Assembly: GCF_001194135.2 (NCBI RefSeq)
Contig: NC_068994.1
Span: 43,586,768-43,650,767, forward strand
Source of the DNA: Octopus bimaculoides
Lineage: Eukaryota
Direction of reading: 5' to 3'
Length of the DNA stretch: 64,000 bases
Of the stretch, positions 19,415 through 51,702 are shown piece by piece. The position numbers and the translations under genes are program-made. Numbering within the stretch: position 1 is the first letter of the stretch; each line of letters opens with the position of its first letter. Below the pieces are notes generated by a model. It did not search any database. It was not told the origin of the DNA and saw nothing but the letters and a program-made list of their open reading frames with translations.

Positions 19415-19465
<51 letters not shown>

Positions 19466-24069: not shown

Positions 24070-24109
<40 letters not shown>

Positions 24110-30892: not shown

Positions 30893-31191
30893 TTATTCAA
30901 CTTTATACAAATGTTTGATACAATAAATAAGGGCAGCAAATTTATCATTATTCCTGAAGTGAGATCTCCACGTAAATTCTGTTAAATAAGAGTTAAATAA
31001 GGCTTTATTATTACTTGAATGTTTACGTTGCAATTGTTTCTTAACTCTTGGCCACATCCTGTCGATATTTTTAGTGTGGATTTCTGGATCGTTTGGATTT
31101 TCATAGTCTATATATTCATGAGTGTATATGCCATGTTCAATCTGGTCAATTTGAAGATATTCAGCCCATATATCTGATACAATATGAGTGC
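30893..31191 (-). CDS. Gene A exon 2: C-terminal half of a Merlin/IS1595 (ISXO2-like) transposase-derived protein (329 aa in total)
   Basis: Acceptor tcattgtAG. Phase-1 exon translates (G)THIVSDIWAEYLQIDQIEHGIYTHEYIDYENPNDPEIHTKNIDRMWPRVKKQLQRKHSSNNKALFNSYLTEFTWRSHFRNNDKFAALIYCIKHLYKVE*. Carries the family SDxWxxY, HTxxI(E)xxW and YLxEFxWR motifs and is conserved in genes B and C. Confidence 0.92.
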
Positions 31192-31683
31192 CTACAATGA
31201 AAATAATGACATTTTATACAGAAATGAAAACTCACATCTACGGAATAATAGATGAAATGAAAATAGTTACAACGGAAAAGCAAAAGCAAATCATACACCA
31301 CGAATATATTGCTGTATCTTAGTGACAACACCTGTTATTAAAACATTAATCATCGCCTATAGAAGCAGTAGCTCATCTTGAAAGAAGGCATCTCTAAGTG
31401 TCGAGTATAGTGTCAACAAGCATATGCAAGTATTACATCATTTTATACAGTTGCTTCACTTTTGGGAGTAAAAATTGGTCAGCATAGTTGTTGTTGAGAA
31501 AGTTTGCAACATACGCAACAGGTAATGTCAGTTATCATTTTTTAAAGGGGATTTTCAAATTTGTCTTTCACTATTCATTTTTTACTGACAAACTTTACTT
31601 CCTCCAAAACAATTGTCAACACCATCTAAGAAATATATTTCTATCTTTGTTTGCTACACTATGACAGAAAACACAGATATCTA

Positions 31684-32109
31684 CCGTAAATACTCGAGTA
31701 TAATCCGCACTTTTTTCTCAAAATTTAATGGTCAAAATTTCTAGTGTGTACTATACACGAGGTTAAAAATGAAAAATATTTTCTAAGCAAAATTTTCTAA
31801 ATGATAAAATATGTAAAGGCAATTTACTTAATATTTATTTTTCACTAACGTTATTCCTGTTATTTCTTTATTTTCTGCAAACAAAGTGCACAAAAAAGCT
31901 ACACGTTTGCATTATGTTATATAAACAATAATAATAAAGAACGTTACTGTATATACGTTTACAAACTAAGGACGTTATATAGACCTCCTTGACTCAAGTT
32001 AGAGAAGGGGTGCGTATTATACACAAGGTTTAGGTTTTTCAGAGGTACAGCCCCCTAAAAATCCCCTGCATATTATACTCAAGGGCGGACTATACTCGAG
32101 GATTTACGG
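31684..32109. mobile_element. Tc2/pogo-like MITE, 426 bp, TA TSD
   Basis: TIRs CCGTAAATACTCGAGTATAATCCGC and CCGTAAATCCTCGAGTATAGTCCGC (2 mismatches in 25), TA on both sides. Absent from the paralogous introns. Confidence 0.9.
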
Positions 32110-32432
32110 TATTTATTTTCCTTCTTCTCGGTTTGTTGATTCAACATTACAATTTTACAATCCTGCTAAGAATGTTAGAGTTAGATACTTAGATACTTAA
32201 ATGAAGATTAATACCTAATGAAATATACTGCCTTTTCTTATGTTCTATTGTTTAGTGGGTCGAGTGAACGATCACTTTTATATAATGTTAAGCTTAATAC
32301 TTACCCCTTGCAATAGATCCTAATGAGACAACTAGTTCTAGAGCCACAGTTAAGATAATCCATTTACAAGCTGGGCCAAGCTGATAAGAAAATAACCTGT
32401 TTGTGTTGGTGCCATTACACAGAATGACTAAC

Positions 32433-32624
32433 TTTGGCATGGTGTACAAAACATGCTGCCTGGTTTAAACCATTTTCGAAACTTTGGATACCTTTTAAAA
32501 AATTGGCTTTGTTACCAGCAATCCTTTCTCTTATTGCCCTATCAGTCAGTATATATTCCAACATTCTGTTCATAGCTTGTAGATCTCTCCAACTAGCATG
32601 GGATTTGGAGGCAACCCAGTGAAA
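32433..32624 (-). other. Candidate coding exon of an unidentified gene (192 nt, phase 0-0) inside the gene A intron
   Basis: ttctgtAG ... AAA|GTTAGT. Open frame FHWVASKSHASWRDLQAMNRMLEYILTDRAIRERIAGNKANFLKGIQSFENGLNQAACFVHHAK looks protein-like, but I do not recognise it. Confidence 0.35.
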
Positions 32625-33129
32625 CTACAGAAGTAATTACTAAAGCATGTCAGAATTTGAAAAGCAATATCTGGTTTCTTTCTCCATTTCACTCAACAAG
32701 TTTTTCTTTTAAACATTATAAAACATGCAAGAATCTATCAGTTCGATAAAGTTGCATCAACTTTCTCTCCATTACTAAATACTAACATAATAATTTAAAT
32801 AAAGTGAATAGTTAAAACTAATGTTCTTTTGCTCACAGACTTTCACAACTTCGAGGAAAAGTTTTACTTCATTCCCATAGCAAAGGTCCTGTAGATTTAA
32901 TTTATATACATTGCCCTACTTCAAACTGCAATTTAAAGTGAGACAACTTTGTAGTAGTGAATATATTTGATCAATATAAATATGTAGCTGCATGTATGTT
33001 TGTTTGTGAAGGGACATTGTTATAAGTGCTTGGTTCATAATAATAAGACTGCAGGTTCAAATCCTGGAGCAGGCATCGCATTGTGTCCTCAAACATTACC
33101 CACTGTTTCAGTCTTTTCTTTTCGTCACC

Positions 33130-33419
33130 CTTTCAAAGCCTAGCCAGGCTCATGGGTCCGGTTTCCCGGTTTCAATGGCGTATGTGTTCCCCCCCCCCCA
33201 GCTAGACGGGACGCCAGTCCATCACAGCGTTACTCAAGAAACAGGAAGAAAGAGTGAGAGAGAGTTGGGGCGAAAGAGTACAACAGGGGTTGCCACGACA
33301 CCCCAGCCGGAGCCTCATGGAGCTTTTTAGGTGTTTTTGCTCAACAAACACACATGACGCCCGGTCTGGGAATCGAAACCGCAAGTCCGCTGCCCTAACC
33401 ACTGGGCCATTGCGCCTCC
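33130..33419 (-). mobile_element. tRNA-derived SINE (GGAGGCGCAATGG head)
   Basis: Same head as 38168-38550, with a different 3' body. Confidence 0.85.
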
Positions 33420-34191
33420 ACATTGTTTCAGTTTACTTAACTGTAAATGAGTACCAGCCCCATGGTGGTGCAGCTCTGTCTCCCACTACCATCACATCCA
33501 GGGCTGCCACAGTGTCAAAAGTGAGAGGGCCAAAAAAGTCTATGTCCACTTGCAACTACATGAATTCCTAAAAGCAAAAGCTTGATACATGTTACCAGGC
33601 CATATTCACTCACAAGTGACAGTTGACTCTGCAATTTCGAAGTATGGGGACTTACATGCTGGACTTAAAGTTTCTGTGTAAACAATAGAATAGTTGCACT
33701 TCTTCAGCTACTGTAAGTCTGATGCCCGCCTCTTTCTCTCTTATCTTTATTGTAGCTATTCCACAGCTTGGATTTGCAACAATGTCACATTAATCAATCA
33801 TTTTTTCAGCATCTGAGTGGTTTGTGATATTGCTTGCAACAATAATTTCTGCTGTTGAATGAAATTTGTTGAGATCCTCTCAAAAATTGTGATAAATGGT
33901 TTGTAAAATAATACTAATGATCTTTCGATAAGTATTTTAAGTGGCCAACAAAAGTTTAAGTTGGCTTCCTGTCAACAAACAATATATTTGACATTTAGTT
34001 CTTCAATTATATACTACCACTAAACTATGAAATCAGTACTTTCAATTTCAAGACTTAGGCTCATAAATTTTAAGATGAATGAATCACTAAATTTGTGCGA
34101 AAAATAAGGTAATGTGTATATAGTTTATGACACACATATATCTATGTGAATGTGTGTGTACTGATACATATACAATCTTTTCTAATGTGAA

Positions 34192-34420
34192 GGTGGTGAG
34201 CTGGCAGAAACGTTAGCACACCAGGCTGAATGCTTAGCGGTATTTCATCTGTCTTTATGTTCTGAGTTCAAATTCCACTGAGGGCGACTTCACCGTTCAT
34301 CCTATTGGGGGGGGGGGTCAATAAATTAAGTACCAGTTGCGTACTGGGACCGATGTAATAGACACGCCCCCTCCCCCAAAATTTCGGGCCGCGTGCCTAG
34401 AGTAGAAAAGAATATTTTCA
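34192..34420 (+). mobile_element. tRNA-derived SINE (GGTGGTGAGCTGGCAGAA family)
   Basis: Similar to 19037-19270. Confidence 0.85.
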
Positions 34421-35326
34421 AATGTGATCTCATTTGAAATAGCTAATTTGTATTATAACCGTAGTCTTTGAAAGATATCAAAATATTTGTAACACTGATT
34501 TAGTGCTTTCAGAAAATGATTCACAATTACCATTTTCTTCTCTATATGATAATTTATGTACTTATACCGAAAGATGACCACATTATGTTTCAATAATTTT
34601 CTAATTAAAAATCTCTTTTCGTTATTCTTTTACCTCGAAATGTATATTCGATAGTTTGGACGGCGATCTCACAGTATAATTTACAGTTTTTATTTTCTAA
34701 AACATAGGCCTTCTTTTCTAGAAAAAGTCATAAAAAGATATGCATTACAAAGAAAGTTAAGAGGACCTAAACTCAGAGGCGGAGCATCAAACTGTAGTTA
34801 TGTCTAATATCGTTTTGATTACTGTTCGACAATTTCTGGTATATGTGCAATTTATGTCTCACGAATCTAGTAGTCCTACTGTAAGTAAAGATAGTGACAG
34901 AAGCCAGCAAAAATGAAAACTACTAAAGTACTGATAAAAAATCAGGAAGGAATAAAAATTGAAGTGGTACGTTATACGCCAAGATCGCCATTTTGATTTG
35001 TATCCGTGTTGACTTAATTGTTGAAATGTCAATTTGGTAAATTTTACTCAGTGTTGTGGAGCGTCTATCAACTGAAACTAAGTGTGTTTTTACTTTGAAA
35101 TTTGAAGTTAAAACTCTGTTGATGATGTTATTCCACAAGTGCTTGTTGTTTCATATAGATACAAGGCCGTTATTATTCATTGACAGAGCGGCGAAAACAA
35201 AACAAAACAAAACAAAAACGATAGGGAGTAACGTAGGAAGGGAACTGGCGAAACGGTATTTTAAGCATAAACTAAGATCTGAAGACAATGTAGATCAAAG
35301 AAAACCATAGATATTATTAATCATAC

Positions 35327-36017
35327 CTGGTAAAATCCATCGGATAATTGCAGCTTCGAAAGCTTCTTTATTTTCATGTTCAATAGGTACAAGGAAACAT
35401 TTGTCAGTGCCACGTTCGATTCCACCGAAAACACAAAATCCTTTTATATGTTTTTCATTAGGCTTAGATCTCGAAAATGTAGTTACATCTATTTCAACGA
35501 CTTTTGGTTCACCTGTCTGCAAATCGAAGCCGCCAATTTCAGGTGGGTCATCTAATTCTTTGGGATGGTCTTCTAGAAACCGTTCTAGTAGTTCTCGGAT
35601 GAGCCGGAACAGATCAATAGTTGACTTCGGACAGACGTTTGTTTCATGGGTCATTTCGGTATGTAGATAATCTCTTGACCACATATACATAAGCCATATG
35701 AATGTTGTCAGCGAGAGATGACTATTCTCAAAAAAAGACCCCTTCCGGATCGATCGAACGAAGTTATGTTTTCGACATCTCCATCGTTTTCCATCGATAC
35801 CTTTCTTGTAGCCGACGATTGTACATGGTTTGTCACAAATGAGACACTTAAAGGAATTGCTTATGAGCTTATATTTCGCCAACCATGAAATTGCTATATC
35901 ATTCGTGGAAGTCTGTTGAAAGAGATCAGAAAATGTCCAAGACTCTTGCCTAATTTTTTCGTCATCAACGATGTCAGTGCATAACAGTTTATAGCTTAGT
36001 CGTTTACCGCGTGACAT
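35327..36017 (-). CDS. Gene A exon 1: zinc ribbon, helical region and first DDE strands of a Merlin/IS1595-derived protein
   Basis: ATG at 36017, 691 nt, ends ...WILPG at the donor CCAG|GTATGA. Motifs CxxC...DGKRWRCRKH, SIRKGSFFE, IGG...VVEID and VFGGIERGT are typical of eukaryotic Merlin/ISXO2 transposases. Confidence 0.95.
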
Positions 36018-36063
36018 CCTATTTTACAAGTGAAATAACAAAAATATTACAAATACAAGCATA

Positions 36064-36102
36064 ATACGAAACTATGGCTTAAAGAAAATATCAGTTTCGT
36101 AT
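36064..36102. promoter_or_regulatory. Conserved inverted repeat ATACGAAACT-N19-AGTTTCGTAT upstream of gene A
   Basis: Perfect 10-bp arms. The same motif is found upstream of B and C. Function inferred. Confidence 0.55.
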
Positions 36103-36530
36103 GAATTAATTTTCATTATCACAAGTCATTCAATGCGACAACAAAACAAAAAAAGTTTTCATTCATTCTAAGTTTGAAATCTGATTAGATATTCTTTCAC
36201 AATCTAGACTGAAAATAGTTCATATTAACTTCTTCAGAAATACAGAACTTAAGTAATTTTCTTGAAACTTTCTTAATTCATTTTCTCTTTTTGTATGAAA
36301 GTATCTATCTTTCGTCGTAATTTAAGTATTTTTAATTCAAAGGTTTACTCTGGCAAATTAAAATGAAAATTGATATTTTAATGTGTATCCTTAATCAGCA
36401 CATCATAATCATCACCATTTTAACGTCTGCTTTTCAATATTTGCATAGGTCACTCAGGGTTTACTGAGGCAGATTTTCTATAACTAGATGCGGCGGACGT
36501 CGGACTTAGGAAGCACCAAGTTGAAATTTC

Positions 36531-37505
36531 GGTCAATATAAAGATCTCCACCCGGGAACAAAAAAAATTAAAAAATAATAATAATAAACCAGCCTAGTGA
36601 GTGTTAACAAGTATGTAGAAAACGAATATGAAAAAAAAAATGCGCGCCGCTGACGACCGTGGGGAGGTGACTTTCGGAAAATTCGCAAGATCCCTTTTTT
36701 CCGTCATAACTTTAGGTAAAATGGATATATATTNNNNNNNNNNNNNNNNNNNNNNNNNNNNNNNNNNNNNNNNNNNNNNNNNNNNNNNNNNNNNNNNNNN
36801 NNNNNNNNNNNNNNNNNNNNNNNNNNNNNNNNNNNNNNNNNNNNNNNNNNNNNNNNNNNNNNNNNNNNNNNNNNNNNNNNNNNNNNNNNNNNNNNNNNNN
36901 NNNNNNNNNNNNNNNNNNNNNNNNNNNNNNNNNNNNNNNNNNNNNNNNNNNNNNNNNNNNNNNNNNNNNNNNNNNNNNNNNNNNNNNNNNNNNNNNNNNN
37001 NNNNNNNNNNNNNNNNNNNNNNNNNNNNNNNNNNNNNNNNNNNNNNNNNNNNNNNNNNNNNNNNNNNNNNNNNNNNNNNNNNNNNNNNNNNNNNNNNNNN
37101 NNNNNNNNNNNNNNNNNNNNNNNNNNNNNNNNNNNNNNNNNNNNNNNNNNNNNNNNNNNNNNNNNNNNNNNNNNNNNNNNNNNNNNNNNNNNNNNNNNNN
37201 NNNNNNNNNNNNNNNNNNNNNNNNNNNNNNNNNNNNNNNNNNNNNNNNNNNNNNNNNNNCCATAACCAAAAACGTAGGATTCCGTAAATAAAATCAATTT
37301 ATATCCATTTTACCGGAAGTTATGACGGAAAAATGGGATCTTGTGAATTTTCCGAAAGTCCCCTCTCCACCCCCAGGGTCTACAGCGCGCATTTTTTTTT
37401 TTTTTTCATATTCGTTTTCTACATACCTGTTAACACCTATCAGGCTGGTTTATTATTATCATTTTTTATTTTTTTTGTTCTCGGGTGAATATCTTTATAT
37501 TGACC
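36531..37505. mobile_element. Long-TIR (~200 bp) fold-back DNA element with GG...CC termini, flanked by GAAATTTC on both sides; centre in a gap
   Basis: ggtcaatataaag...ttatgacggaaa arms are reverse complements on either side of gap 36734-37259. Confidence 0.8.
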
Positions 37506-38167
37506 GAAATTTCTCAAATTTCTCCGTTTTGACGGAGATTTTTCCATGTTTGCCTAGGTCACTCAGGGTTTATTGAAGCAGATTTTCTATAATCAGATGC
37601 AGCGGACGTAGGACTTAGGGAGCACCAACAAGTTGAAATTTCTCCGTTTTAACGGGGATTTTTCAGATTTTTTTCCTGATGCCCATGGAAATGCTCTAGA
37701 CTATGTTTTTAGCAAAAAAAATAAATTTGCGAAAAAGGATGTCGTTTTGTTTTATACCCGTACCCATTGACCGATTTTGGTCGATGATTTTTGGCAGGTA
37801 CTTCACACTTTAAAACTATAGAAGCCTTTTCGGTAAAAAAAAAAAAAAGATTATAGGAGTGAGATTATAGAATACGGTAGATAGAAGAGATGGTTGGAAG
37901 ATATGAAGGTTTGGAATAAATAGACAGCAGTGGTAAGTTATATTATCCCACTATTTTAGAGAGTATTTTAACAAGGTGGTACAGGTATTGCATTTCACCT
38001 GTTGACATGGTCCTCTGTCATCTACTACGGCTGTAGCATCTTAAGATTGTTCTTCATCTCATTCCAGGCCATTTTTTGGTTTTTTCCTCACACAGGTACT
38101 ATTTCTTTTGAGTAGTCAGCTCATACTCATGTAGATATCACTCTTTCTAGCATGCTACATCTGATAC

Positions 38168-38550
38168 GGAGGCGCAATGGCCCATTGGTTATGGCAGCGG
38201 ACTCGCAGTCATAAGATCGCGGTTTCGATTCCCAGGCTGGGCGTTGTGAGTGTTTATTGAGCGAAAACACCTAAAGCTCCACGGGGCTCCGGAAGGGGAT
38301 GGTGGCGAACCCTGCTGTACTCTTCCACCACAACTTTCTCTCACTCTTACTTCCTGTTTCTGTTGTGCCTATATTTCAAAGGGTCAGCCTTGTCACACTG
38401 TGTCACGCTGAATATTCCCGAGAACTACGTTAAGGGTACATGTGTCTGTGGAATGCTCAGCCACTTGCACGTTAATTTCACAAGCAGGCTGTTCCGTTAA
38501 TCGGATCAACTGGAACCCTCGGCGTCGTAAGCGACGGAGTGCCAACAACA
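38168..38550 (+). mobile_element. Full-length tRNA-derived SINE (GGAGGCGCAATGG family)
   Basis: A-box and B-box-like head (tggcccattggtt; ggtttcgattccc), (CAA) tail. Confidence 0.9.
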
Positions 38551-39619
38551 TCTGATACAGATATATGCACACACACACACACACGTGTGTACTGATTGTG
38601 ACTTCTCTAGCTTTTCATAGTCTGTTTCTATCATTTGACCCTGTCAAACCTACATACATTCACTATAGAAACAACAATTACAGCCACTACAAGAATTTTG
38701 AAATTTCATTTCATTGGTCAATTTTGTTTAACATTTTAATTTTCATTAGAAGATGAAATAATCTGACATAGTCAGTTCAATGCTTTCCATTAGTGAAAAT
38801 TAGCCAATCAGTTTCACTCCTCAAAATCTAAGCAAACTCTCATTGGGAAGTCTATCACTTGCTGTTTAAAACACCTAACCCACAAATTTAATCAGTGAGA
38901 TACTAGTGGCCTTAGAAGCTAGGAAACCAGCCTATATTATTTTACTATTCACAAACACTCCCACAATCATTGCCATGATTGTTGCACAAACTTTCTATTT
39001 CTTGCTCACTTTATTCTCAGTGAAATTACACAATAAAAATTCACACACATATTCTCATTTGAAAAATACTCAGTAACTTTCACAAGTAGATAGACAGTGT
39101 TATTTTCCTTTCTTTTCACCTCATACAACACTTTATCAATTTTCTATTACATCAAGGTAAAACGAAGAGCTGTATGTCTTGAAACTTCCCGATCCACTTT
39201 TACCGTTGGTTCTTGGGCAGAATCAGCAGTTTCCATAAATTCAACATTGCATCTATCCAGGTTATCATGAATTTGTGAAATGTATGCTTCGCATTTAGTT
39301 CCTCTGATAGAATAAAAATTTGTTGGGATTCAAATAGCTGTATAACTGGTTTTCTCAAAGTACATCTAATCAAAATATTTTGAAAAATAAAATCCTATCA
39401 GATAAGTTTGTGCTCTGTCACCAGTCATTTATTCTTTGATGAAAATGAACCTTCATGTGAAAATTGTAAAAGTGAATGATCAACCAACCTGTTAAAGAGG
39501 GTAGTAAAGCATCCTCCAACTCACAACCTAAAATCTTACAGAAAAAGGACAGCTTGAGCAATGTGGTCTTGGTGCACTGTCTTGGAAAAAGTGAGAAGCT
39601 ATGTAGCCACTTGACCCCA

Positions 39620-39790
39620 TAGAGATACCTTACGTAAACCCATTTTTACCCCTGGGAAGAAGTGATTCACATCAGTGTGACCTCTATCCTTTGCACTGTC
39701 CAGCATGGGTGGTCCTACTTGTGATCTGCCAGTATAGCTCTGAGGGTCACTGATGGACACAAGCTACCACATTTCTACAAGGGCTAGACC
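39620..39790 (-). mobile_element. RTE-clade LINE 5'-region fragment (probable)
   Basis: Related to 10013-10120. Confidence 0.45.
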
Positions 39791-41073
39791 CTGAGGTAAA
39801 TTAGTCTGCTGTAGATTTGGAATAAATCCCTCAAAAATACAGAATGATCATGACTGGAATGCCTTTGATCATGTTTGTATGATGAAGACAGACATGGAAT
39901 TAAACTTTCTTTAATCTTTATGAAATGAAATATATTTATAAATTCCTTACAACAGCATATAGAGAAGATATGACAATGCTTTTGATGGATTGACAATTTC
40001 CCTAAAGAGATTACTGAGGGAAGTTTCATGTTGTAATAATGAACAGACATGGTCAGTAATTTATTCAGTTCAAATATTTTCTTCACCAGACCACGTATCT
40101 CACCAGTTAGAAGAATACTGCTCTTGAATCTGCTTGTTTCTAGCTGTTTAGAGTGGCCTCTGTTCAAGAATTTGCCTTATTCACCACAGTAGGCCAGCAA
40201 GTTAGCAAGGATGTTATATTAGGTAAAAGGCATTTTGGCACAGCTGTTTTGGCATCACCGATTCATTTCCCAACAGACGTTTTAATGTTTCATTTCCTTT
40301 CTCTTTGTGAGCATCAAATTATGAATGTGTAATGTCTTTCTCTCTCACTCTATCGGTAAGTGCATATTTCTACATGTGTGCATGTTTTTCCCCAACAAGT
40401 GAAATGTCCAGTCAGCCATGCCAATCATCAGCATCTAGTCTCATTCCAATTTTAGGCACCCAGGCAGAATTTGATTCAGAACACAGCCAGCTGGAACAAA
40501 TACCATAAAGCACCCAATCTGTCAATCCAACAACCTGGATTGACACTTCTTTCTTTTATCAATGTTGAAAGATAAAGCTGACCCTGCTGGGATTTGATCT
40601 CAGAACTCAAAGAATCACAACATATACTGCAAGACAGTTTGTCAGATATTCTAATGACCCTGCCTATGTCTAGATTTTTTACATTCAATATTTGGAATTT
40701 GCTTTTGAAATGAAAAGAAAACAATTCTCAACCAAAACAGCAAACAAATGTTACAAACCCTGCCCAAGATGGAGCAACTCCTGCCTCAAAGACAGCACTA
40801 CTTCTTCCTTATTTTGTCCGCCTTTATAATGTCTATCTTTAACATAATTCACAACAAATTATGTTCAGATTTAAGATACTTAAGCAATTTTATCTTGTAC
40901 TTGTTTCAGTCATGCTGGAGCACGACCTTGAAAGGTTTTAGTCAAATAGATCACCACCTATACTTATCTTATTGGTCTCTTTTGCCAAACTGCTGACTTA
41001 CAGGGATGTAAACAAACCAACACCAATTGTTAACCAGTGGAAAGGGGCCAACCATAGATATATATATATATTC

Positions 41074-41260
41074 GAAACGCTGGAGTTAAAACAGGGGTAG
41101 CTGATGAAGGAAAATGTTCTCTATGTGGCTTGTGTGTTTTCTGTACTCTGGTTATTATTATTCTCTTGTCTACGTTTTGTTTGCAATGTCCTGTACCCAG
41201 ATATGCACCTATATATACAGGTAGACGTAGGTATGCACATACCTGTACGTATATATGCAT
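41074..41260 (+). mobile_element. Interspersed repeat (Penelope-like-end candidate), copy 3, 5'-truncated
   Basis: Homologous to 8807-9080. Confidence 0.55.
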
Positions 41261-41581
41261 ATACTCATTTATTATTTGTTATATATATATATAGATATAT
41301 ATATATATATATATATATATGGGGAGCTATCATATAGTTTTCATCAACCACATTCATTAATAAAGCATTTGTAAGCCTGGAGCTATGGTAGATGAGACTT
41401 ACGCAAAGTGCCACACAGTGGGATTGAACCAAAAGCCATGTGGTTGCAATGTAACCTTCATAACCACACAGCTATGGCTGTGCCTGTAATTATTTTGGTC
41501 AATTTTTCTTAAGCACATGTTTAACAAAAATTATGATGTGAAAATTGCACAATTGGCTACAAAAATATAAAAGCAAATATA

Positions 41582-41877
41582 TTAGACTTTATACAAATGT
41601 TTGATACAGTAAATTAGGGCAGCGAATTTATCATTATTCTTAAAGTGAGATCTCCACATAAATTCTGTTAAATGAGAATAAAATAAAGCTTTGTTATTAA
41701 TTGAATGTCTTCGTCGCAGCTGTTGCCTGAATCTGAGCCACATTTTGTTGATATTTTGAATGTGGATTTCTGGATCATTTGGGTTTTCATAGTCTATATA
41801 TTCATGAGTATATATGCCTTGTTCAAACTGTTCAATTTGAAGATATTCAGCCCATATATCTGATACGATATGAGTGC
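41582..41877 (-). CDS. Gene B exon 2 (Merlin/IS1595-derived protein, 328 aa in total)
   Basis: Acceptor ttcattacAG. Translates (G)THIVSDIWAEYLQIEQFEQGIYTHEYIDYENPNDPEIHIQNINKMWLRFRQQLRRRHSINNKALFYSHLTEFMWRSHFKNNDKFAALIYCIKHLYKV*. Confidence 0.92.
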
Positions 41878-43112
41878 CTGTAATGAAAGTAATGAAGAGT
41901 TATTTATAAAAGATTTATACATTTTCCAAAGTTAAAAATCAAGTGAAACAGAGATTTAACATAGCAAAACTAAATCACAGACTTCACTCACCAAAAATAT
42001 ATTGCTGCATCAGAGTAATTTCAAAACTAAAATAATATAGTTACCACCTATATGTTAAGTAGTCTGTCTTGAAAGAAGGTATATCCAAGTGTGAATGACT
42101 ACAAAGTCACATACTGTATTATATTATATTAGTGAACCTGCCTTTATTCTTTACTGGTAATTTTCACTCACTCCCTCCACGATCAATGGCAATAGCACCT
42201 TATTAATTTAAGTGTATGTTTCTTTATTGTGGTATAGCAGTGAACAGAAATGTTAAACCATTTCTTCTTCAAAGTTAATTTACAGATTCTGCATTAAGAT
42301 CTTACAATCCTGTTTTATGTGTTAGATTTTCCATGTTTAACATATTTAACCCCAAGAAGCTCAATTACTTCATGTAATACACTGCCTTTTGTCATACGCT
42401 TCACTGTTTAATGAGTCTAAATTGACATGTACGACATTATGTAAAAGAAAAAAAAAAAAGATGAACTGGCTGTCCAAGCATACAGGCATGTCTTCTATAT
42501 ACCCTCACTTTCAAGTGAACCTAATCATGCAGGCTCTTGGGTGCTGGTGCTACATAAAAGCACCTGTGTTGGTGTCACATAATAGTGCCTGTGTTGGTGC
42601 CATGCAAAAGCGCCCATGCTGGTATCCTGTAAAAGAACACATGCCAGTGTTATGTAAAAGCATCCAGCACACTTTGAAAAGTGGTTGATGTTAGGAAGGG
42701 CATCCAGCTGTAGAAACCACGCCAAATCAGACTGGACAACAGACATTAAATGATGATGACACATGGTTACAAATCAAAATTCAAAATTGTCTTAAATTTC
42801 ATTGGGCTAAGCTTGTCATTCGGTAGATTAGTACTTCTCAAACTATCTGATGTGGCATACTGGCAGTTTCTTTTGGTATTTTTCAATGTGCCAGGGACCG
42901 GTAATATTAATTTATACCAGAAACAATATATATAATGAATATAATAAAAAGTTGACAATTTTTTAAAATCTTATTTTGTAAACAAATAATACAATATTAC
43001 ATAAGCATTTTATAATGTTTCTTTCTTTTCAATACTATCAGGTTACAATTGATTAGCTATCATTCCTTATCAACTGTAGTATTGCCATTTAATTAATTCT
43101 CAATCTCTAGAG

Positions 43113-43405
43113 CATTGGTTCTTTACCATCTTTTACTTATGGAGCCCTGTGATTACTATTTTACTCTGGGAGACCCCCAATAGCCATTCAATGTTTAAAA
43201 ACTAGTTTTATAGATTCTGCTTTCAAAATTCCTATTTTGCTTTTCCCCCAAAAAAAGTTTTTGCTGTTTCTTGCAATAAATGCATCTAAAACAAAATTTT
43301 TTTCATGGATCCTTAATATACTACACTGGGTTCCCATTTTACTATTTTGCTTGCATGGACCCCCAAAAATCTTATATGGCCCTCCAGAGCTTATATGGAC
43401 CACAG
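43113..43405. mobile_element. hAT (Charlie-like) MITE with 8-bp TSD CTCTAGAG
   Basis: CTCTAGAG at 43105-43112 and 43406-43413. Degenerate termini CATTGGTTC / CTGTGGTCC. NTCTAGAN is the known Charlie-type target preference. Confidence 0.7.
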
Positions 43406-44516
43406 CTCTAGAGCCCTAGTGCTGATAGAGCTTACGTTTATATATTAGTTTATTAAAAGATACAGGTGTCAAAGCTATTTACAAAACCTAATACTTTTAT
43501 ATTCATACTGATTTTTTTGTTACAGTCTTCTGACAGGTTTTGCATTATAAGATGTGGGGATCAACGTTGCAAGGCCAGGTTGACACAATCAATCATTTTA
43601 TTAACAACCAGATGTTGCAACTAAAGTCAGCTGTTGAGAGATTTCTGATCATAACAGAAACACAAAAATTAAACCGAATTCGTTTTTGTTTCGAATTAGA
43701 TAAAAACCATGAATGGGAAACTGTTGTAAAATAGGTCCAGATCGTCAAATAAAACGATAGCTACATCCAACAAATCTAAAGTGGTCCAATTACTGACCAG
43801 GGGTTATAAGTAAGTATCGGTGAAGCTGTTTTTTTTATTTTTTAATAGACTGTTTAATGACCTAAAAATAAACAATTTAAGGAGGTAAATCAATTACATC
43901 GACCCCTCCCACCCCCAGTATCCAACCGCCACTTAGTCTTTCGTCCTTTTGGGGTTGATAAAATAAGTCGACATTGGCGGCATTTAAACACAGAACATAG
44001 AGGGCAGGCGACATACTGTTAAGCATTTTGCCCGGCGTGCTAACGATTCAGTTAGTTCGAGGCACACTTGTGTAGGTATGCCTATTAATAAATGAATAAA
44101 TAAAATATGGAGAAGTTTCAGATAATTTTCTTTTCACATATCGAACTTATTTCCTCAAAACTATTTTTTATCCCTAAATCTTATCAACATAAGCATACTT
44201 TTTCCCCACGGGAAACATATGTATGTCGAATTACATTTAAAATTATGCATTTTATGAAGAAACAAAGTTGGATGAAAGGAGAGGTACTATTCAAGGAGAA
44301 TTATCCGAAACACCTCCAAAAATGTTTCTAAATTATATTAATACAATTGTGGTATACATCTTCAAAAATCCAATACTAAATTTAATTTTAAAAGATGCAT
44401 TTTTCAAAACATTAAAAAGGAAACAAAATCGGAAGGAGTTGCACCAAACTGTGCAGTTACACCTAATTTGGAAAACCGCACAAATCGAAGAAAATCGTAG
44501 ATTTTATTACTCATAC

Positions 44517-45207
44517 CTGGTAAAATCCATCGGATAATTGCAGCTTCGAATGCGTCTTTATTTTCATGCTCAAGGGGTACAAGGAAACATTTGTCAGTGC
44601 CACGTTCAATTCCACCAAAAACACGAAATCCTTTCAAATGCCTTTTATTAGATTTAGATCTGGAAAATGTAGTTATATCTATTTCAACGACTTTTGGTTC
44701 ACCTGTCTGTAAATCTAAGCCGCCTATTTCAGGTGAGTCATTTAATTCAGTGGGGTGGTCTTCCAGAAATCGTTCTAGTAGTTCCCGGATGAGCCTAAAC
44801 AGGTCAATACTTGATGTTGTACAGATATCTGTTTCAAAGGTGATTTCATTATGTAGATAATTTCTTGACCACATATACATAAACCATAGAAACGTTGTCA
44901 ACGAGAGATGACTATTTTCAAAAAACGATCCTTTGCGTACCGATCGAACGAAGTTATGCTTTCGACAGCTCCATCGTTTTCCATCGCCACCACTGTTGCG
45001 AGTGACAAATGAACAAGGGTTACTACAAGTGGGACACAGAAAAGAATTGCTTATAAGCTTGTATTTCGCTAACCACATCATTGCTGTATCTTTCGTGGAA
45101 GTCTGTTGAAAAAGATCAGAAAATGTCCAAGTCTCTTGCGTAATTTCTTCATCCTCAATGATATCTGTACTTATCATTTTCCGGCTAGGTTGTTTAGCGC
45201 GAGACAT
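44517..45207 (-). CDS. Gene B exon 1 (Merlin/IS1595-derived protein)
   Basis: ATG at 45207 (MSRAKQ...), 691 nt, the same length as in A and C. Donor CCAG|GTATGA. Confidence 0.95.
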
Positions 45208-45252
45208 TATGATACAAACCAAACAACGAAAAGAATAAGGAAATTTCACTAC

Positions 45253-45292
45253 ATGCGAAATCAAATGCTTAAAGGGAATGTCAGTTTCGTAT
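45253..45292. promoter_or_regulatory. Conserved inverted repeat upstream of gene B (ATGCGAAATC-N20-AGTTTCGTAT; one arm degenerate)
   Basis: Positional and sequence match to the A and C motifs. Confidence 0.45.
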
Positions 45293-45863
45293 CAACTATT
45301 TTGTATGACAAATGAGTTAATTGCTCTCAGACACACAAAATAATTAATATAAAATTCTTCTTTAGAAATATAGGACTTAATTCTAAAAGTAACTTACTTA
45401 AAGCATTGCCTTTTCGTTATAGAAAGGAAAGAAGCAGTTTAATCTTTTTTTTTTCTGTTTTTAATGCTGGTAAACTTAGATTTTTAAATGACAGCCTCGG
45501 TGTGAAATGTAAACAAATATGTTGCATTTCAGATCCGAAATAGGTGGAGTCTTGATTAAAGCACAACGTTGTTGCTTCACTTTTGTCAATAATTTTCTCG
45601 CATTTTTTATATGGTGCTCTATCGCCTCGCCGAATTATGTTTTCAGTATGAAAAATCATGCAAAAAAAAACAAAAAAAAAATTCACAATATTTTGGTGAA
45701 TTTTTCAGCGGAAATTTTTAATAAATGATTGCAAACCTCATGGGGGAAGATAACTGACAAGTAATGTATCTTTCTTTTATTTATTTTCTTTTTGGCAAGA
45801 CTTCCTTTTGTACCCCACCCTCAAAACATCCCTTTATTATTATTTTTTTTTTTTCTTCTACAT

Positions 45864-46266
45864 AAACCCCCGTTTTCGGCTACGGAGAATACGAATCTGC
45901 AAAAGAAATGGGCAAAAATCGGCATTTTGAAATTACCCCCACCCCAATTTCTTCATTTTTAACTTTTTTCAGGAATTTTTTTCTTTATTTATTTATTTAT
46001 TTTTTCAAAATATGCGGAAAATTACGGAGATTATGGTTCTGAAAAGCATTTCCAAAAATTTTTGTAAAATTTTTTTTCAGAATTTTGTTTTTTCAANNNN
46101 NNNNNNNNNNNNNNNNNNNNNNNNNNNNNNNNNNNNNNNNNNNNNNNNNNNNNNNNNNNNNNNNNNNNNNNNNNNNNNNNNNNNNNNNNNNNNNNNNNNN
46201 NNNNNNNNNNNNNNNNNNNNNNNNNNNNNNNNNNNNNAATCTCCGTATCCGAAAACGGGGGGTTTT
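45864..46266. mobile_element. Inverted-repeat (MITE-like) element spanning a gap
   Basis: aaacccccgttttcggctacggaga and tctccgtatccgaaaacggggggttt are reverse complements. Confidence 0.6.
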
Positions 46267-47679
46267 TTGGAGAATAAAAAAATGGGGAGAAAATGGGGAG
46301 AGACGCGAGAAGTCTTTCCTTCTTTTTTACCCACACAGCGGAAATTACACCACCCAACAAAATTTCAACTTTCTACATTTTTCGTGCTCTCGTTTTTTTT
46401 TCTCCTTCAAGAAACAGTGATAACTCTTCCAGAACTACCGCATCCAAAACATCTGGTACTACCTAAATACAGGTGTTACGTGCACAACATTTTAAATATA
46501 CGTTATGTGGACGTGTAATGACACCCTAACCCTAAAACTACCCCCCCCCCTTCATATCGTTACGTAGATTCAGCAGTACCTCTGTATTTAAGTAGTGCCA
46601 AATATCCTCCTTTTACATTTTTCAAATTGTTTTCCGGCTTGTTTATTTATTCATTTTTGTATGTTTGAAAAGGTGGGGAGTATGATTCGAAAAACAAAGT
46701 TGGTGATCTTTCGCACCTAAGAAAGCACTTTCAGAAATTGCAAAAGTTATGAATGATTCAAGGTCTCTGCGAAACAGGAGATAAACTACAGCAACTCCTT
46801 TCATTTTGTGTATGTGTGTGCATGGTACCAATTGTAAAAGCTTCTTTGTGACTGAGTATACAAATTATAAAAGTATCTTGTATGTGTGTGTGTCAGCATG
46901 CATGCTCAGTGTCTTTCCTGGCTTCTTAAGTATGACTATATGATTTCAAGACTCTATTTACAGTACTATTCCACCACATTTTCAGCTTGGGTTGGACTGG
47001 AACCTTGCACCACCCACAGGCTTCGTCTGTAGCCTGCAACAGATTGTTATCTAATAACTTCCAGATTTTTTGTGCTGAAAGTCTCTACCTTGTCTTCCTT
47101 TCTGACATAAGCATCAGCTAGAATCTTTCAGAATCTAGCTGGAGGCTCTTTTATCTTCCATGTCATCTTTCTCCAAATTGTACCCTGTCTCTGAGTCTAT
47201 CAAACTCATACTCTAAAGTAACTAATCACTACTCTATGCCAGTGCTTTCTTCACTAGGGAAACACTTAGCCTTTACAAGCATCTACCTGTCTTGTTTGCC
47301 TAACATTTAGATGATAAGGTGGCTGGTCAACTTCTTGAATTTCTGTTGTAAATGGTTGTGTCATTTGCACCATATAACTTGACTTTTGATCACAAAACTA
47401 TAAGCCATCATAATATTGTTTCATTATTTTAAATATTTTTTATATAATAAGCTAGACAACAATTGAGGTTATTGAAAAATTCATATTTAGGTAACTTATA
47501 TTGTTAGAAACAATGCCAAATATTTAGCATAACTCAGCAGATGTAAATTTCAGGGTATTCCATTATTCAGGTGAGAACACCTCTGTACACAATGTGTTTT
47601 GTAACATGACTTAACAGTTGGACAAAAATTATGAGAGAAAAAGAACTAAATTAAGTACAAAAATATAAAATCAAATTTA

Positions 47680-47975
47680 TTAGACTTTATACAAATGTTT
47701 GATACAATAAATGAGAGCAGCAAATTTATCATTATTCTTAAAATGAGATCTCCACATAAATTCTGTTAAATATGAGTGAAATAAAGCTTTATTATTTATC
47801 GAATGTTTACGTTGCAATTGTTGTTTAACTCTCTGCCACATCCCGTCAATAGTTTTGGTGTGGATTTCTGGATCATTTGGGTTTTCATAGTCTATATATT
47901 CATGAGTGTATATGCCTTGTTCGATCTGGTCAATTTGAAGATATTCAGCCCATATATCTGATATAATATGAGTGC
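47680..47975 (-). CDS. Gene C exon 2 (Merlin/IS1595-derived protein, 328 aa in total)
   Basis: Acceptor cttcattacAG. Translates (G)THIISDIWAEYLQIDQIEQGIYTHEYIDYENPNDPEIHTKTIDGMWQRVKQQLQRKHSINNKALFHSYLTEFMWRSHFKNNDKFAALIYCIKHLYKV*. Confidence 0.92.
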
Positions 47976-48149
47976 CTGTAATGAAGATAACATTTTATAC
48001 AGAAATGAAGATGTATTTGTAGAACTAAAATGAGGTGTTTCATTAATACATTTTCCAAAGGACAAAATGAACAAAAAGTTCTAATCAACAAGCAAAACCA
48101 AATGACAGTCTTTGCTCCCCAAAATTATATTGCTGTATCTTAATGACTG

Positions 48150-48312
48150 AGTGGCTATGTGGTAAGTAGCTTGCTTACCAACCACATGGTTCCGGGTTCA
48201 GTTCCACTGTGTGGCACCTTGGGCAAATGTCTTCTACTATAGCCTTGGGCCGACCAAAGCCTTGTGAGTGGATTTGGTAGACGGAAACTGAAAGAAGCCT
48301 GTCGTATATATG

Positions 48313-48345
<33 letters not shown>

Positions 48346-48540
48346 TTGTGTTTGTCCTCCTAGCATTGCTTGACAACCGATGCTGGTGTGTTTATGTCCC
48401 CGTCACTTAGCGGTTCGGCAAAAAGAAACCGATAGAATAAGTACTAGGCTTACAAAGAATAAGTCCTGGGGTCGATTTGCTCGACTAAAGGCGGTGTTCC
48501 AGCATGGCCGCAGTCAACTGACTGAAACAAGTAAAAGAGT
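48150..48540 (+). mobile_element. Near full-length tRNA-derived SINE (TGGCTATGTGGTAAG family) in the gene C intron
   Basis: Multi-copy in this window. Confidence 0.9.
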
Positions 48541-50647: not shown

Positions 50648-51338
50648 CTGGTAAAATCCATCGGATAATTGCAGCTTCGAAAGCTTCTTTATTTTCATGC
50701 TCAATAGGTACCAAGAAACATCTGTCAGTGCCACGTTCAATTCCACCAAAAACACAGAATCCTTTCAAATGTTTCTTGTTCGGTTTACATCTGCGAAATG
50801 TGGTTACATCAATTTCAACAACTCTTGGTTCACCTGTCTGTAAATCGAAGCCGCCAATTTCAGGTGGGTCATCTAATTCTGTGGGATGGTCTTCCAGAAA
50901 CCGCTCTAGTAGTTCTCGGATGAGCCGAAATAGATCAATAGTTGACTTTGTACAAACATTCGTCTCATGAGTAATTTCATTATGTAGATAATCTCTTGAC
51001 CACATATACATAAGCCATAAGAATGTTGCCAGCGAGAGATGACTATTCTCAAAAAAAGACCCTTTGCGGATCGATCGGACGAAGTTATGTTTTCGACATC
51101 TCCATCGTTTTCCATCGATAATATCTTTCTGGTTTACAAATGTACATGGGCTGTTACAAATGAGACACATAAAAGAATTGCTTATGAGCTTATATTTTGC
51201 TAACCATGTAACTACTATATCATTTGTGGAAGTTTGTTGAAAAAGATCAGAAAATGTCCAAGACTCTTGCCTAATGTTTTCGTCGTCAACGATGTCAGTA
51301 CATATCATTTTTCGACTTCGTCGTTTACCGCGTGACAT
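50648..51338 (-). CDS. Gene C exon 1 (Merlin/IS1595-derived protein)
   Basis: ATG at 51338 (MSRGKR...), 691 nt. Donor CCAG|GTATGA. Confidence 0.95.
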
Positions 51339-51367: not shown

Positions 51368-51411
51368 TTATACGAAACTAATTCTATGAAGAAATTAATA
51401 GTTTCGTATAA
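51368..51411. promoter_or_regulatory. Conserved inverted repeat TTATACGAAACTA-N18-TAGTTTCGTATAA upstream of gene C
   Basis: Perfect 13-bp arms. Confidence 0.55.
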
Positions 51412-51702
51412 ATTGTTTTACATTATGAAAAAAGTTCGGGCACTACTTTGATACAGAGGTCCCGATGCATCTACGTAACGATATGTTTTTACAGTGCACA
51501 CTCGTTTGGGCGTTAGGATTAGAGTTAGGTTTATGGCAGTATACTTAATATTTTGAAGTTATAAGCTTCGCTGTGTAATATAATCAAACGTTTATGCATC
51601 TCCGTGGCATGCAAAATATTGGAATTGCTCTGACTATTTGTAGATTTATCGAGAACAAGTGACTTCGTTTTATGCTCACAGAGAAATTTATAGTTTATAG
51701 GC

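What the first reader, a model, noticed from the sequence alone, without database searches (positions are those of the whole stretch)
30893..47975. Altered catalytic triad: D-D-D in A and C, D-D-N in B
Seen: the first Asp (VVEID) and the second Asp (SDIWAEY) are retained. The family's HTxxIE glutamate is D in A (HTKNID), N in B (HIQNIN) and D in C (HTKTID). The acidic residue usually following the first D (IDE) is V or I, and the usual VNH motif reads IDY. Established: IS1595/Merlin transposases use a DDE triad. Inference: reduced or changed chemistry in A and C and probable inactivation in B. That fits non-transposing roles such as DNA binding or dominant-negative control of Merlin elements, or a repurposed nuclease.
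Basis: partly seen in the sequence, partly recalled or inferred. Interest (0 to 1): 0.75.

Follow-up and report, generated by a model that had tools for sequence, protein, structure and literature searches.

The report
Domesticated transposase gene trio in octopus
Three neighbouring Octopus bimaculoides genes descend from an IS1595/Merlin "jumping-gene" enzyme, have a rebuilt active site (D-D-D or D-D-N instead of D-D-E), and have been kept as ordinary host genes under strong selection, so they are a tamed transposase family and not live or dead transposons.

Summary
The window, which is from Octopus bimaculoides, holds three intact two-exon genes on the minus strand: A (LOC106868238), B (LOC106868237) and C (LOC106868236). 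The two assembly gaps are intergenic and touch no exon or intron. Alignment to close mobile relatives and to annotated bacterial IS1595 transposases puts D177, D237 and residue 274 on the family's D, D and E. Residue 274 is D in A and C and N in B.

Roughly 70-93% of about 330 relatives are DDE, including Merlin-like proteins from Octopus and Mytilus. DDD is essentially confined to the octopus clade. That clade also lost the E after the first D, the N-H motif (a 4-residue deletion) and several conserved basic residues.

These are host genes:
- A and B have no terminal inverted repeats.
- One intron sits in the same codon in every copy examined.
- The A/B/C trio is present in three Octopus species, and the family has at least eight paralog lineages.
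- Ortholog dN/dS is 0.04-0.15.

B, the DDN copy, is the most constrained, so it is not an inactivated gene. Two other paralog lineages lost D177 or D237 and are still conserved. A catalysis-independent role, most likely DNA binding or assembly on DNA, fits best. Residual nuclease activity in the DDD members is not excluded. This is a new member of a known kind, of moderate interest.

The parts
35327..36017 (-). Gene A (LOC106868238) coding exon 1. It runs from the ATG at 36017 to the donor after 35327. It encodes the zinc ribbon (C58, C61, C81, H84), the helical DNA-binding region and strands beta1-beta3 with D177 (codon 35489-35487, GAT).
30893..31191 (-). Gene A coding exon 2. It holds D237 (31174-31172), the third position D274 (31063-31061, GAC) and the stop codon at 30895-30893.
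31192..35326 (-). Gene A intron: 4135 nt, phase 1, inside the Gly231 codon, with no N bases. Its blocks are colinear with the O. sinensis ortholog at 82-95% identity.
44517..45207 (-). Gene B (LOC106868237) coding exon 1, with D177 at 44679-44677.
41582..41877 (-). Gene B coding exon 2, with D237 at 41860-41858 and the third position N274 at 41749-41747 (AAC).
50648..51338 (-). Gene C (LOC106868236) coding exon 1, with D177 at 50810-50808. This exon lies outside the finding's stated span.
47680..47975 (-). Gene C coding exon 2, with D237 at 47958-47956 and the third position D274 at 47847-47845 (GAC).
36064..36102 (.). Conserved palindrome ATACGAAACT-N19-AGTTTCGTAT, 47-85 nt upstream of A's ATG. 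It is shared by all paralogs and orthologs examined and is a candidate promoter or operator element.
45253..45292 (.). The same upstream element in front of B. The left half is intact and the right half is degenerate (GATTTCGCAT).
51370..51409 (.). The same upstream element in front of C, with a perfect 11-nt stem.
36734..37259 (.). Assembly gap. It is intergenic, between A's ATG and B's stop, and sits at the centre of a foldback of about 1.2 kb (arms 36431-36733 and 37296-37642).
46097..46237 (.). Assembly gap. It is intergenic, between B's ATG and C's stop.

Best explanation
A, B and C are three members of an Octopus gene family of at least eight paralog lineages. The family arose when an IS1595/Merlin-type transposase (zinc ribbon, helical DNA-binding region and RNase H-like DDE core) was captured as a host gene.

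Shown:
- On the stem of this clade the active site was rebuilt. The changes are E274 to D, E178 to V/I, a 4-residue deletion that removes the N-H motif, and loss of conserved basic residues in the beta1-beta2 loop and on the catalytic helix.
- An intron was acquired.
- The gene then duplicated in tandem and onto other chromosomes.
- Every copy examined has been kept by purifying selection.

Inferred:
- The proteins no longer carry out cut-and-paste transposition.
- They most likely work as nuclear proteins that bind DNA through the retained zinc ribbon and helical domain. The strongly conserved RNase H-like core would then serve as a DNA-contact or multimerisation scaffold.
- An intact acidic triad is not needed for the family's function, at least in B (DDN/DDS) and in the DGD and GDD paralogs.
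- The palindrome conserved upstream of every paralog is a candidate shared regulatory, possibly autoregulatory, site.
For: Homology:
- PF12762 scores are above the gathering cut-off for all three (48.9, 31.8 and 50.4 bits against 27).
- NF033547 aligns over residues 98-309.
- The AlphaFold model has pLDDT 84 and the RNase H strand and helix order. D177 is on beta1, D237 follows beta4 and residue 274 is on alpha4.
- The best Foldseek hits are retroviral integrase N-terminal plus catalytic-core fragments.

Host-gene status:
- A and B have no TIRs beyond A-runs.
- By contrast, the Hydra relative P0029 sits in a 1700-bp intronless element with perfect 29-bp TIRs that start with GG.
- The same phase-1 intron is present in A, B, C, in LOC106879049 and in the O. 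sinensis and O. vulgaris orthologs.
- Introns and flanks cannot be aligned between paralogs (45-57% identity), while coding sequences are 85-89% identical.
- The A/B/C trio is found in the same order in O. sinensis and O. vulgaris, and A's intron is colinear between species.
- Each of the paralog lineages has a one-to-one ortholog in two or three species.

Selection:
- Paralog dN/dS is 0.18-0.26.
- Ortholog dN/dS is 0.050 for A, 0.036 for B and 0.12-0.15 for C, all with Fisher p < 1e-16.
- dN is still well below the intron divergence of 9.4%.

Catalysis not required:
- B has had a non-acidic third residue since before the bimaculoides/vulgaris split. It is N, N and S in the three species.
- The LOC106879382 lineage is DGD in two species.
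- The LOC106879048 lineage is GDD in three species.
- All of these keep intact, conserved reading frames.

Shift of constraint:
- Residues 171-200 and 261-290, the first-Asp loop and the catalytic helix, are the best-conserved parts of the outgroup. They are the relatively least conserved parts in the octopus clade.
- Residues 141-170 and 301-328 became almost invariant.
- 18 outgroup near-invariant columns are replaced.
Against: - D177, D237 and D274 are each kept in 7 of 8 paralog lineages.
- The RNase H core (residues 201-260) is the most conserved part of the protein. Both points would also fit a retained metal-dependent activity.
- DDD triads are catalytically competent in other superfamilies, namely mariner and piggyBac (my own knowledge).
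- There is no direct evidence here for nuclear localisation, DNA binding or expression. RefSeq isoform models are the only hint of transcription.
- The model's confidence is low (pLDDT 55-58) exactly over residues 261-290, and I could not measure the active-site geometry.
Confidence: 0.6

Rival explanations
1. The family keeps enzymatic activity. The DDD members (A, C, LOC106879047, LOC106879049, LOC106877799) are still metal-dependent nucleases or recombinases with altered specificity. The triad-defective paralogs (B, the DGD type and the GDD type) are non-catalytic partners in hetero-oligomers. This resembles PiggyMac with the PiggyMac-like proteins of Paramecium.
For: - Two aspartates plus a third acidic residue are kept in 5 of 8 lineages and in all their orthologs.
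- The RNase H core is the best-conserved region.
- The basic residue 7 positions after residue 274 is kept.
- The paralogs are retained together in tandem trios in three species.
- RefSeq models even splice B exon 1 to A exon 2.
Against: - The whole clade lost the otherwise invariant E178, the N-H motif and several conserved basic residues.
- The catalytic helix and the first-Asp loop show relaxed constraint.
- Each triad position was lost once without loss of the gene.
- No target such as TIR-like repeats was seen in the window.
Confidence: 0.25
2. The proteins are repressors, dominant-negative or TIR-binding, of active Merlin/IS1595 elements in the octopus genome.
For: - Octopus genomes carry many Merlin-like sequences. 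There are 191 blastp hits in O. bimaculoides (PMC8101967) and two Merlin families with 11 recent insertions in O. vulgaris (PMC13282606).
- DDE-intact Merlin-like proteins exist in O. bimaculoides and O. vulgaris.
- The DNA-binding N-terminus is retained.
Against: - No mobile relative closer than about 45% identity was found. The octopus clade collapses into a single cluster at 50% identity and the next hit is at 39%. Shared TIR recognition or heteromerisation with today's elements is therefore doubtful.
- Eight anciently diverged paralogs under long-term constraint are more than is usual for a short-lived repressor of one transposon family.
- Nothing here tests binding.
Confidence: 0.1
3. A, B and C are copies of a still-mobile or recently mobile transposon whose transposase happens to use DDD, or they are decaying relics.
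For: - PF12762 domain.
- Several copies in the genome.
- An inverted pair of 47-75 nt flanks gene C.
Against: - A and B have no TIRs, and the pair around C is absent from A and B.
- An intron splits the catalytic domain at the same codon in all copies.
- The copies are orthologous and syntenic in three species.
- dN/dS is 0.04-0.26 with no frameshifts or stops.
- There are no near-identical young copies.
Confidence: 0.03

Closest known systems
Metazoan IS1595/Merlin-type transposons with a zinc ribbon, for example the Hydra vulgaris element that encodes P0029 (named 'mab-31' by NCBI), and relatives in Biomphalaria, Batillaria, Pycnogonum and Periplaneta
   Same: - 35-45% identity over the full length.
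- The same architecture of zinc ribbon, helical region and DDE_Tnp_IS1595 core.
- The same spacing, apart from the 4-residue deletion.
   Different: The relatives are intronless and DDE. The Hydra copy has perfect 29-bp GG-TIRs. The octopus genes have an intron, no TIRs (A and B), a DDD or DDN triad, and fixed orthologous positions.
Bacterial IS1595-family transposases: ISAcra1, ISEc75, ISAcr1 and a Pseudosulfitobacter copy
   Same: - The three catalytic columns, the basic residue 7 positions after the third one, and the N-terminal CxxC...CxxC ribbon all align.
- ISAcr1 carries H at the third position, so non-E variants exist within the family.
   Different: - Only 23-33% identity.
- They are prokaryotic mobile elements.
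- ISAcra1 and ISEc75 lack the zinc ribbon.
SETMAR/Metnase, a primate mariner-derived gene with a DDN triad (from my own knowledge, not tested here)
   Same: It is a domesticated DDE/D transposase under purifying selection whose third catalytic residue is Asn, as in B. DNA binding is retained.
   Different: - It belongs to a different superfamily (Tc1/mariner).
- It is fused to a SET domain.
- It is a single gene, not a multi-paralog family.
PiggyMac and the PiggyMac-like proteins of Paramecium (from my own knowledge, not tested here)
   Same: It is a family of domesticated transposase paralogs in which some keep a DDD triad and others have lost catalytic residues, yet all are retained.
   Different: It belongs to the piggyBac superfamily, occurs in a ciliate, and has a demonstrated role in programmed DNA elimination. 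Nothing comparable is known in octopus.
Conserved Merlin-derived genes proposed as domesticated in Stentor and Perkinsela (PMC8101967)
   Same: [quoted passage not shown]
   Different: They are from protists. That paper lists the octopus proteins XP_014768891 and XP_014768889 only as Merlin blastp hits and does not analyse them.
C. elegans MAB-31, a nuclear factor of the Sma/Mab TGF-beta pathway (PMC2921377)
   Same: NCBI names Hydra and Oratosquilla members of this domain family 'mab-31' or 'mab-31-like'. This hints that MAB-31 is itself a co-opted relative with a nuclear role.
   Different: Homology to MAB-31 was not tested here because no sequence was in hand. The 2010 paper reports no similarity outside nematodes. 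This is a lead only.

Membership tests
IS1595/Merlin transposase superfamily (protein homology) | DDE_Tnp_IS1595 (PF12762) domain above Pfam's gathering score | tested here: met
   A scores 48.9 bits, B 31.8 and C 50.4 against a cut-off of 27. NF033547 gives 58.6 bits, below its 75-bit equivalog cut-off.
IS1595/Merlin transposase superfamily (protein homology) | RNase H-like fold with the acidic residues on beta1, after beta4 and on alpha4 | tested here: met
   The AlphaFold model has pLDDT 84.4 and elements E173-181, E194-201, E207-212, H217-227, E233-236 and H271-286. The top Foldseek hits are retroviral integrase fragments, E about 1e-5. No structure of this family has been solved.
IS1595/Merlin transposase superfamily (protein homology) | N-terminal zinc ribbon (Zn_Tnp_IS1595 type, CxxC...CxxC) | tested here: inconclusive
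   C58, C61, C81 and H84 align with the CxxC...CxxC of bacterial IS1595 transposases, with the fourth Cys replaced by His. No Pfam hit to a zinc-ribbon family was reported at E <= 1.
IS1595/Merlin transposase superfamily (protein homology) | D-D-E catalytic triad | tested here: not met
   The third column is D (A, C) or N (B). Relatives are DDE in 93 of about 108, 80 of about 133 and 102 of 110 sequences.
Mobile Merlin/IS1595 element (an actual transposon) | Terminal inverted repeats (Merlin: starting 5'-GG) and 8-9 bp target-site duplications | tested here: not met
   No inverted repeats flank A or B beyond A-runs. C has a 47-75 nt inverted pair that A and B do not share. The Hydra relative has perfect 29-bp GG-TIRs.
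Mobile Merlin/IS1595 element (an actual transposon) | Single uninterrupted transposase reading frame | tested here: not met
   A phase-1 intron of 2.6-4.1 kb sits at the Gly231 codon in all copies. The Hydra and Biomphalaria relatives are intronless.
Mobile Merlin/IS1595 element (an actual transposon) | Copies at non-orthologous sites, or young near-identical copies | tested here: not met
   The trio sits at the same position in three species with a colinear intron. Paralog dS is 0.36-0.52.
Domesticated (host co-opted) transposase gene | Orthologs at a conserved genomic position in several species | tested here: met
   O. bimaculoides, O. sinensis and O. vulgaris all carry A, B and C. The family has at least eight paralog lineages with one-to-one orthologs.
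Domesticated (host co-opted) transposase gene | Intact reading frame under purifying selection | tested here: met
   Ortholog dN/dS is 0.036-0.15 and paralog dN/dS is 0.18-0.26, with Fisher p < 1e-12 throughout.
Domesticated (host co-opted) transposase gene | Expression and a host function | not testable with these tools
   Only RefSeq isoform models (X1-X5) suggest transcription. There are no expression or phenotype data.
MAB-31 family (C. elegans nuclear factor) | Significant sequence similarity to C. elegans MAB-31 | not tested
   The only evidence is NCBI product names on Hydra and Oratosquilla relatives. 'mab-31' does not occur in the supplements of PMC8101967.

The most novel reading that the evidence does not exclude
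Octopuses have built a lineage-specific, multi-subunit DNA-processing or DNA-marking machine from an IS1595/Merlin transposase. The DDD paralogs would keep a modified metal-dependent activity. The triad-defective paralogs (B, the DGD type and the GDD type) would be obligate non-catalytic partners. The composition could be tuned by splicing between tandem paralogs, as in the B exon 1 + A exon 2 isoform. It might also be tuned by A-to-I editing of B's AAC codon 274, which would then read as Asp.
Probability: 0.1. Interest if true: 0.8.

Novelty: new member of a known kind. Interest (0 to 1): 0.45.

Why it matters
Co-opted transposases are a recurrent source of new regulators and DNA-processing enzymes. 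Well-supported cases from the IS1595/Merlin superfamily are rare, and I found none described for animals in the literature I searched. Here a whole family of at least eight paralogs, conserved across three Octopus species, shows a clean natural experiment. The active site was remodelled once, from DDE to DDD along with loss of neighbouring conserved residues. Each triad residue was then lost once in a different paralog, and no gene was lost. That makes the question of whether a domesticated transposase needs its chemistry directly testable by comparing paralogs. It also corrects the census of octopus 'Merlin' sequences, some of which are host genes and not transposons.

Tried and rejected
1. 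Assembly gaps interrupting the genes. Rejected: both gaps are intergenic and the gene spans contain no N bases.
2. More or degenerate copies in the window. tblastn with protein A finds only A, B and C. No other long gene-like reading frames and no tRNAs are present.
3. TIRs. A and B have none. The inverted pair around C (46553-46599 and 51439-51485) is not shared by A and B, and I do not take it as a transposon end.
4. An alternative catalytic Glu. E267 is conserved within the octopus clade but falls in a column that varies in the outgroup, ahead of helix alpha4. It is not the family's E.
5. Literature on IS1595 third-residue variants (DDN, DDH). I found nothing in the searchable library, so I tested the point directly with annotated plasmid copies. 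ISAcr1 has H in that column.
6. MAB-31 link. I found no paper that connects mab-31 with transposases and no occurrence in the supplements of PMC8101967. It remains a lead.
7. PDB sequence search. No solved relative exists, so the catalytic residues rest on alignment and on a predicted fold.
8. O. sinensis B (P0002) and O. vulgaris P0005 could not be looked up by exact protein. I recovered B's exons from the neighbouring locus L008 instead.
9. Polarising the synonymous changes with same-genome paralogs. I consider the result unreliable because parallel compositional drift in the same genome could mislead it.

Full report
**What is there.** The window has 34.7% G+C and nine N gaps. Region 30.9-51.3 kb holds three tandem genes on the minus strand.

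| Gene | Exon 1 | Exon 2 |
|---|---|---|
| A | 36017-35327 | 31191-30893 |
| B | 45207-44517 | 41877-41582 |
| C | 51338-50648 | 47975-47680 |

- Each gene has GT..AG splice sites and a phase-1 intron inside the Gly231 codon. The reading frames are intact and give proteins of 329, 328 and 328 aa.
- The proteins are 100% identical to O. bimaculoides LOC106868238 (A), LOC106868237 (B) and LOC106868236 (C). The window is therefore from O. bimaculoides.
- tblastn with protein A finds no further copies, and the window has no other gene-like reading frame.

**Gap test.** This was the first thing asked for. Gaps 36734-37259 and 46097-46237 lie between the genes. They are 717 nt and 890 nt upstream of the ATGs of A and B. 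No gene span contains an N. Continuity and reading frame of the coding sequence are therefore not in question. The independent RefSeq proteins and the colinear O. sinensis locus agree.

**Observation.**
- All quoted motifs are present at the stated positions.
- All three proteins pass Pfam's cut-off for DDE_Tnp_IS1595.
- In alignments with the nearest relatives the consensus is VVEIDESKFFHRK / SDGWAAY / VVxHxxNFVDP / HTQNxENMWMRAKRKLRRQ.
- The octopus proteins read VVEID(V/I)TTF / SDIWAEY / YIDYENP / HT(K)NI(D/N)(R)MW.
- Four annotated bacterial IS1595-family transposases taken from plasmids anchor the columns. D177, D237 and residue 274 align with their D, D and E, and the basic residue 7 positions later is kept.
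- The spacing is D-59-D-36-D/N.
- The predicted structure has pLDDT 84.4. It has the RNase H order with D177 on beta1, D237 after beta4 and residue 274 on helix alpha4. Its best PDB matches are retroviral integrase N-terminal plus catalytic-core fragments. No member of the family has a solved structure.

**Is the change unusual in the family?**

| Set | DDE | Source |
|---|---|---|
| Close relatives | 93 of about 108 | |
| Representatives at 50% identity | 80 of about 133, many of the rest fragments or single-residue variants | |
| Canonical Merlin-like proteins (including O. bimaculoides, O. vulgaris, Mytilus) | 102 of 110 | |
| Octopus-clade sequences | 0 of 24 have E | |

- Apart from one 174-aa fragment, DDD occurs only in the octopus clade.
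- One caveat applies. A non-E third residue occurs in annotated bacterial elements: ISAcr1 has H, followed by K seven positions later. From memory, ISfinder lists DDN and DDH subgroups in this family. I could not find that in the searchable literature.

**These are host genes, not transposons.**
- A and B have no terminal inverted repeats.
- The Hydra relative P0029 lies in a 1700-bp intronless element with perfect 29-bp TIRs that start with GG, inserted in (TA)n. The Biomphalaria relative is also intronless.
- The intron sits in the same codon in A, B and C, in the unlinked paralog LOC106879049, and in the O. sinensis and O. vulgaris orthologs.
- Between paralogs the introns and flanks are at random-level identity (45-57%), while coding sequences are 85-89% identical.
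- The trio occurs in the same order in O. sinensis (CM016872.1) and O. vulgaris (OX597827.1). A's intron is colinear at 82-95% identity.
- Cluster membership shows at least eight paralog lineages. These are this trio, a second trio (LOC106879047, LOC106879048, LOC106879049) next to RPS10 and a DHHC gene, and the singletons LOC106877799 and LOC106879382. Each has one-to-one orthologs in two or three species.
- The whole clade collapses into a single cluster at 50% identity, and the next relative is at 39% identity.

**Selection.**

| Comparison | dN/dS | Source |
|---|---|---|
| Paralogs A, B, C (dS 0.36-0.52) | 0.18-0.26 | |
| Ortholog A | 0.050 | |
| Ortholog B | 0.036-0.037 | |
| Ortholog C | 0.12-0.15 | |

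- All ortholog values have Fisher p < 1e-16.
- Even with intron divergence (9.4%) as the neutral yardstick, dN of 0.015-0.047 is well below neutral.
- B, the DDN copy, is the most constrained, so it is not an inactivated gene.

**What happened to the active site.**
- All the clade-wide changes trace to the stem of the clade. They are E274D, E178V/I, the 4-residue deletion that removes the N-H motif, and replacement of R184, Y186, G188, W195, R215, Q287 and G289.
- Later, each triad position was lost once. Residue 274 became N in the B lineage (AAC in O. bimaculoides and O. vulgaris, AGC = Ser in O. sinensis). D237 became G in the LOC106879382 lineage (two species). D177 became G in the LOC106879048 lineage (three species). 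All three lineages stay intact and conserved.
- A conservation profile shows that residues 171-200 and 261-290 are the best-conserved segments in the mobile relatives and the relatively least conserved segments within the octopus clade. Residues 141-170, 201-260 and 301-328 are nearly invariant there.
- The pattern is relaxed constraint on catalysis-specific elements, with new or continued constraint on the fold and on two clade-specific surfaces.

**Interpretation.**
- Shown: this is a domesticated IS1595/Merlin-type transposase family with a remodelled triad.
- Inferred: canonical transposition chemistry is not needed for the family's function. The proteins most likely act by binding DNA through the retained zinc ribbon (C58, C61, C81, H84) and helical region, with the RNase H-like core as a scaffold.
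- I put the domestication itself at about 0.9 and the catalysis-independent mechanism at about 0.5-0.6.
- The main rival (0.25) is that DDD members keep a modified nuclease or recombinase activity, with triad-defective paralogs as partners. The retained aspartates and the very conserved core fit this.
It is weakened by the absence of any mobile relative closer than about 45% identity.
- Live transposon or decaying relic is effectively excluded.

**Comparison with what is known.**
- The proteins are homologs of the IS1595/Merlin superfamily but fail the defining features of a mobile element: TIRs, a single uninterrupted ORF, mobility and a DDE triad.
- They meet the sequence-based criteria for a domesticated transposase.
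- From my own knowledge, they resemble SETMAR (DDN) and the PiggyMac/PiggyMac-like set in how they may work.
- PMC8101967 lists XP_014768891 and XP_014768889 among 191 'Merlin' hits of O. bimaculoides without analysing them. It also states that Merlins lack the zinc ribbon, whereas this subgroup has one that aligns with the bacterial ribbon.
- A survey of transposon-derived transcription factors that included Octopus does not mention this domain.
- NCBI's 'mab-31' names on relatives hint that C. elegans MAB-31, a nuclear TGF-beta pathway factor (PMC2921377), may be a precedent. I did not test this.

**Verdict.** This is a new member of a known kind, a co-opted transposase, and of moderate interest.

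Noticed in passing
window 36064-36102 (A), 45253-45292 (B), 51370-51409 (C); also L002, L007, L008 and L001 just upstream of each ATG: A block of about 45 nt with the palindrome ATACGAAACT-N19-20-AGTTTCGTAT lies 47-85 nt upstream of the start codon of every paralog and ortholog examined. The surrounding upstream DNA is otherwise unalignable. The half-sites change independently, with no compensatory pairs. It therefore looks like a DNA site (promoter or operator) and not an RNA hairpin.
   Followed up: partly
O. sinensis LOC115219239 (L008 + L002); equivalent to window B exon 1 (45207-44517) joined to A exon 2 (31191-30893): RefSeq treats A and B as one locus in O. sinensis. Isoform X2 (P0278) is exactly B exon 1 plus A exon 2. 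This read-through splice between tandem paralogs swaps the exon that carries D237 and residue 274, turning DDS into DDD.
   Followed up: partly
coding exons of A, B and C compared with L002, L007 and L008: Four-fold degenerate sites differ by 24-29% between O. bimaculoides and O. sinensis/vulgaris orthologs, against 9.4% in A's intron. The differences are strongly asymmetric, with A/T in O. bimaculoides and G/C in O. sinensis/vulgaris. GC3 of A and B is 0.31-0.32 against 0.43-0.44. The intron shows no such asymmetry. Possible causes are non-equilibrium codon composition decaying at different rates, biased gene conversion, or selection on synonymous sites. The cause is unresolved.
   Followed up: partly
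window 46553-46599 and 51439-51485: An inverted pair of 47-75 nt, 87% complementary, flanks gene C only. It is single-copy in the window, and the upstream arm is conserved in the C orthologs. Telomere-like CCTAACCCTAA lies next to both arms. A and B lack it, so it is probably not an ancestral transposon end.
   Followed up: partly
window 36431-36733 and 37296-37642, around gap 36734-37259: The assembly gap upstream of A sits at the centre of a foldback of about 1.2 kb whose arms are 86-87% complementary. Such a structure would explain why the assembly broke there. Gaps also lie 0.9-1.0 kb upstream of B and C.
   Followed up: partly
L009 2706-4405 (Hydra vulgaris CP147930.1): The protein that NCBI names 'male abnormal protein mab-31' is encoded by an intact 1700-bp Merlin-type transposon. 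It has perfect 29-bp TIRs that start with GG, sits inside a (TA)n tract, and has an intronless DDE reading frame. The product name is misleading for that copy.
   Followed up: yes
window 41749-41747 (minus strand), B codon 274: B's third-position codon is AAC. A-to-I editing of its first base would be read as GAC (Asp), and coleoids edit heavily. O. sinensis has AGC at this codon. This is an untested idea.
   Followed up: no
window 48149-48542, 19430-19640, 52650-52870, 61165-61525, 26120-26280, 24080-24250; tRNA-like heads at 33326-33419 and 38168-38275: A dispersed repeat of about 200-390 bp, SINE-like, has many copies in the window and in the octopus loci L001 and L002. Long (TA)n and (CA)n microsatellites adjoin several gaps.
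   Followed up: no
L001 (O. bimaculoides CM046607.1:56311835-56337287): A second tandem trio of the same family (LOC106879047, LOC106879048, LOC106879049) lies next to a DHHC palmitoyltransferase gene and RPS10. In the 90% protein clusters, RPS10 sequences and LOC106879047/LOC115214512 isoforms fall together. This suggests fused or read-through gene models there.
   Followed up: no
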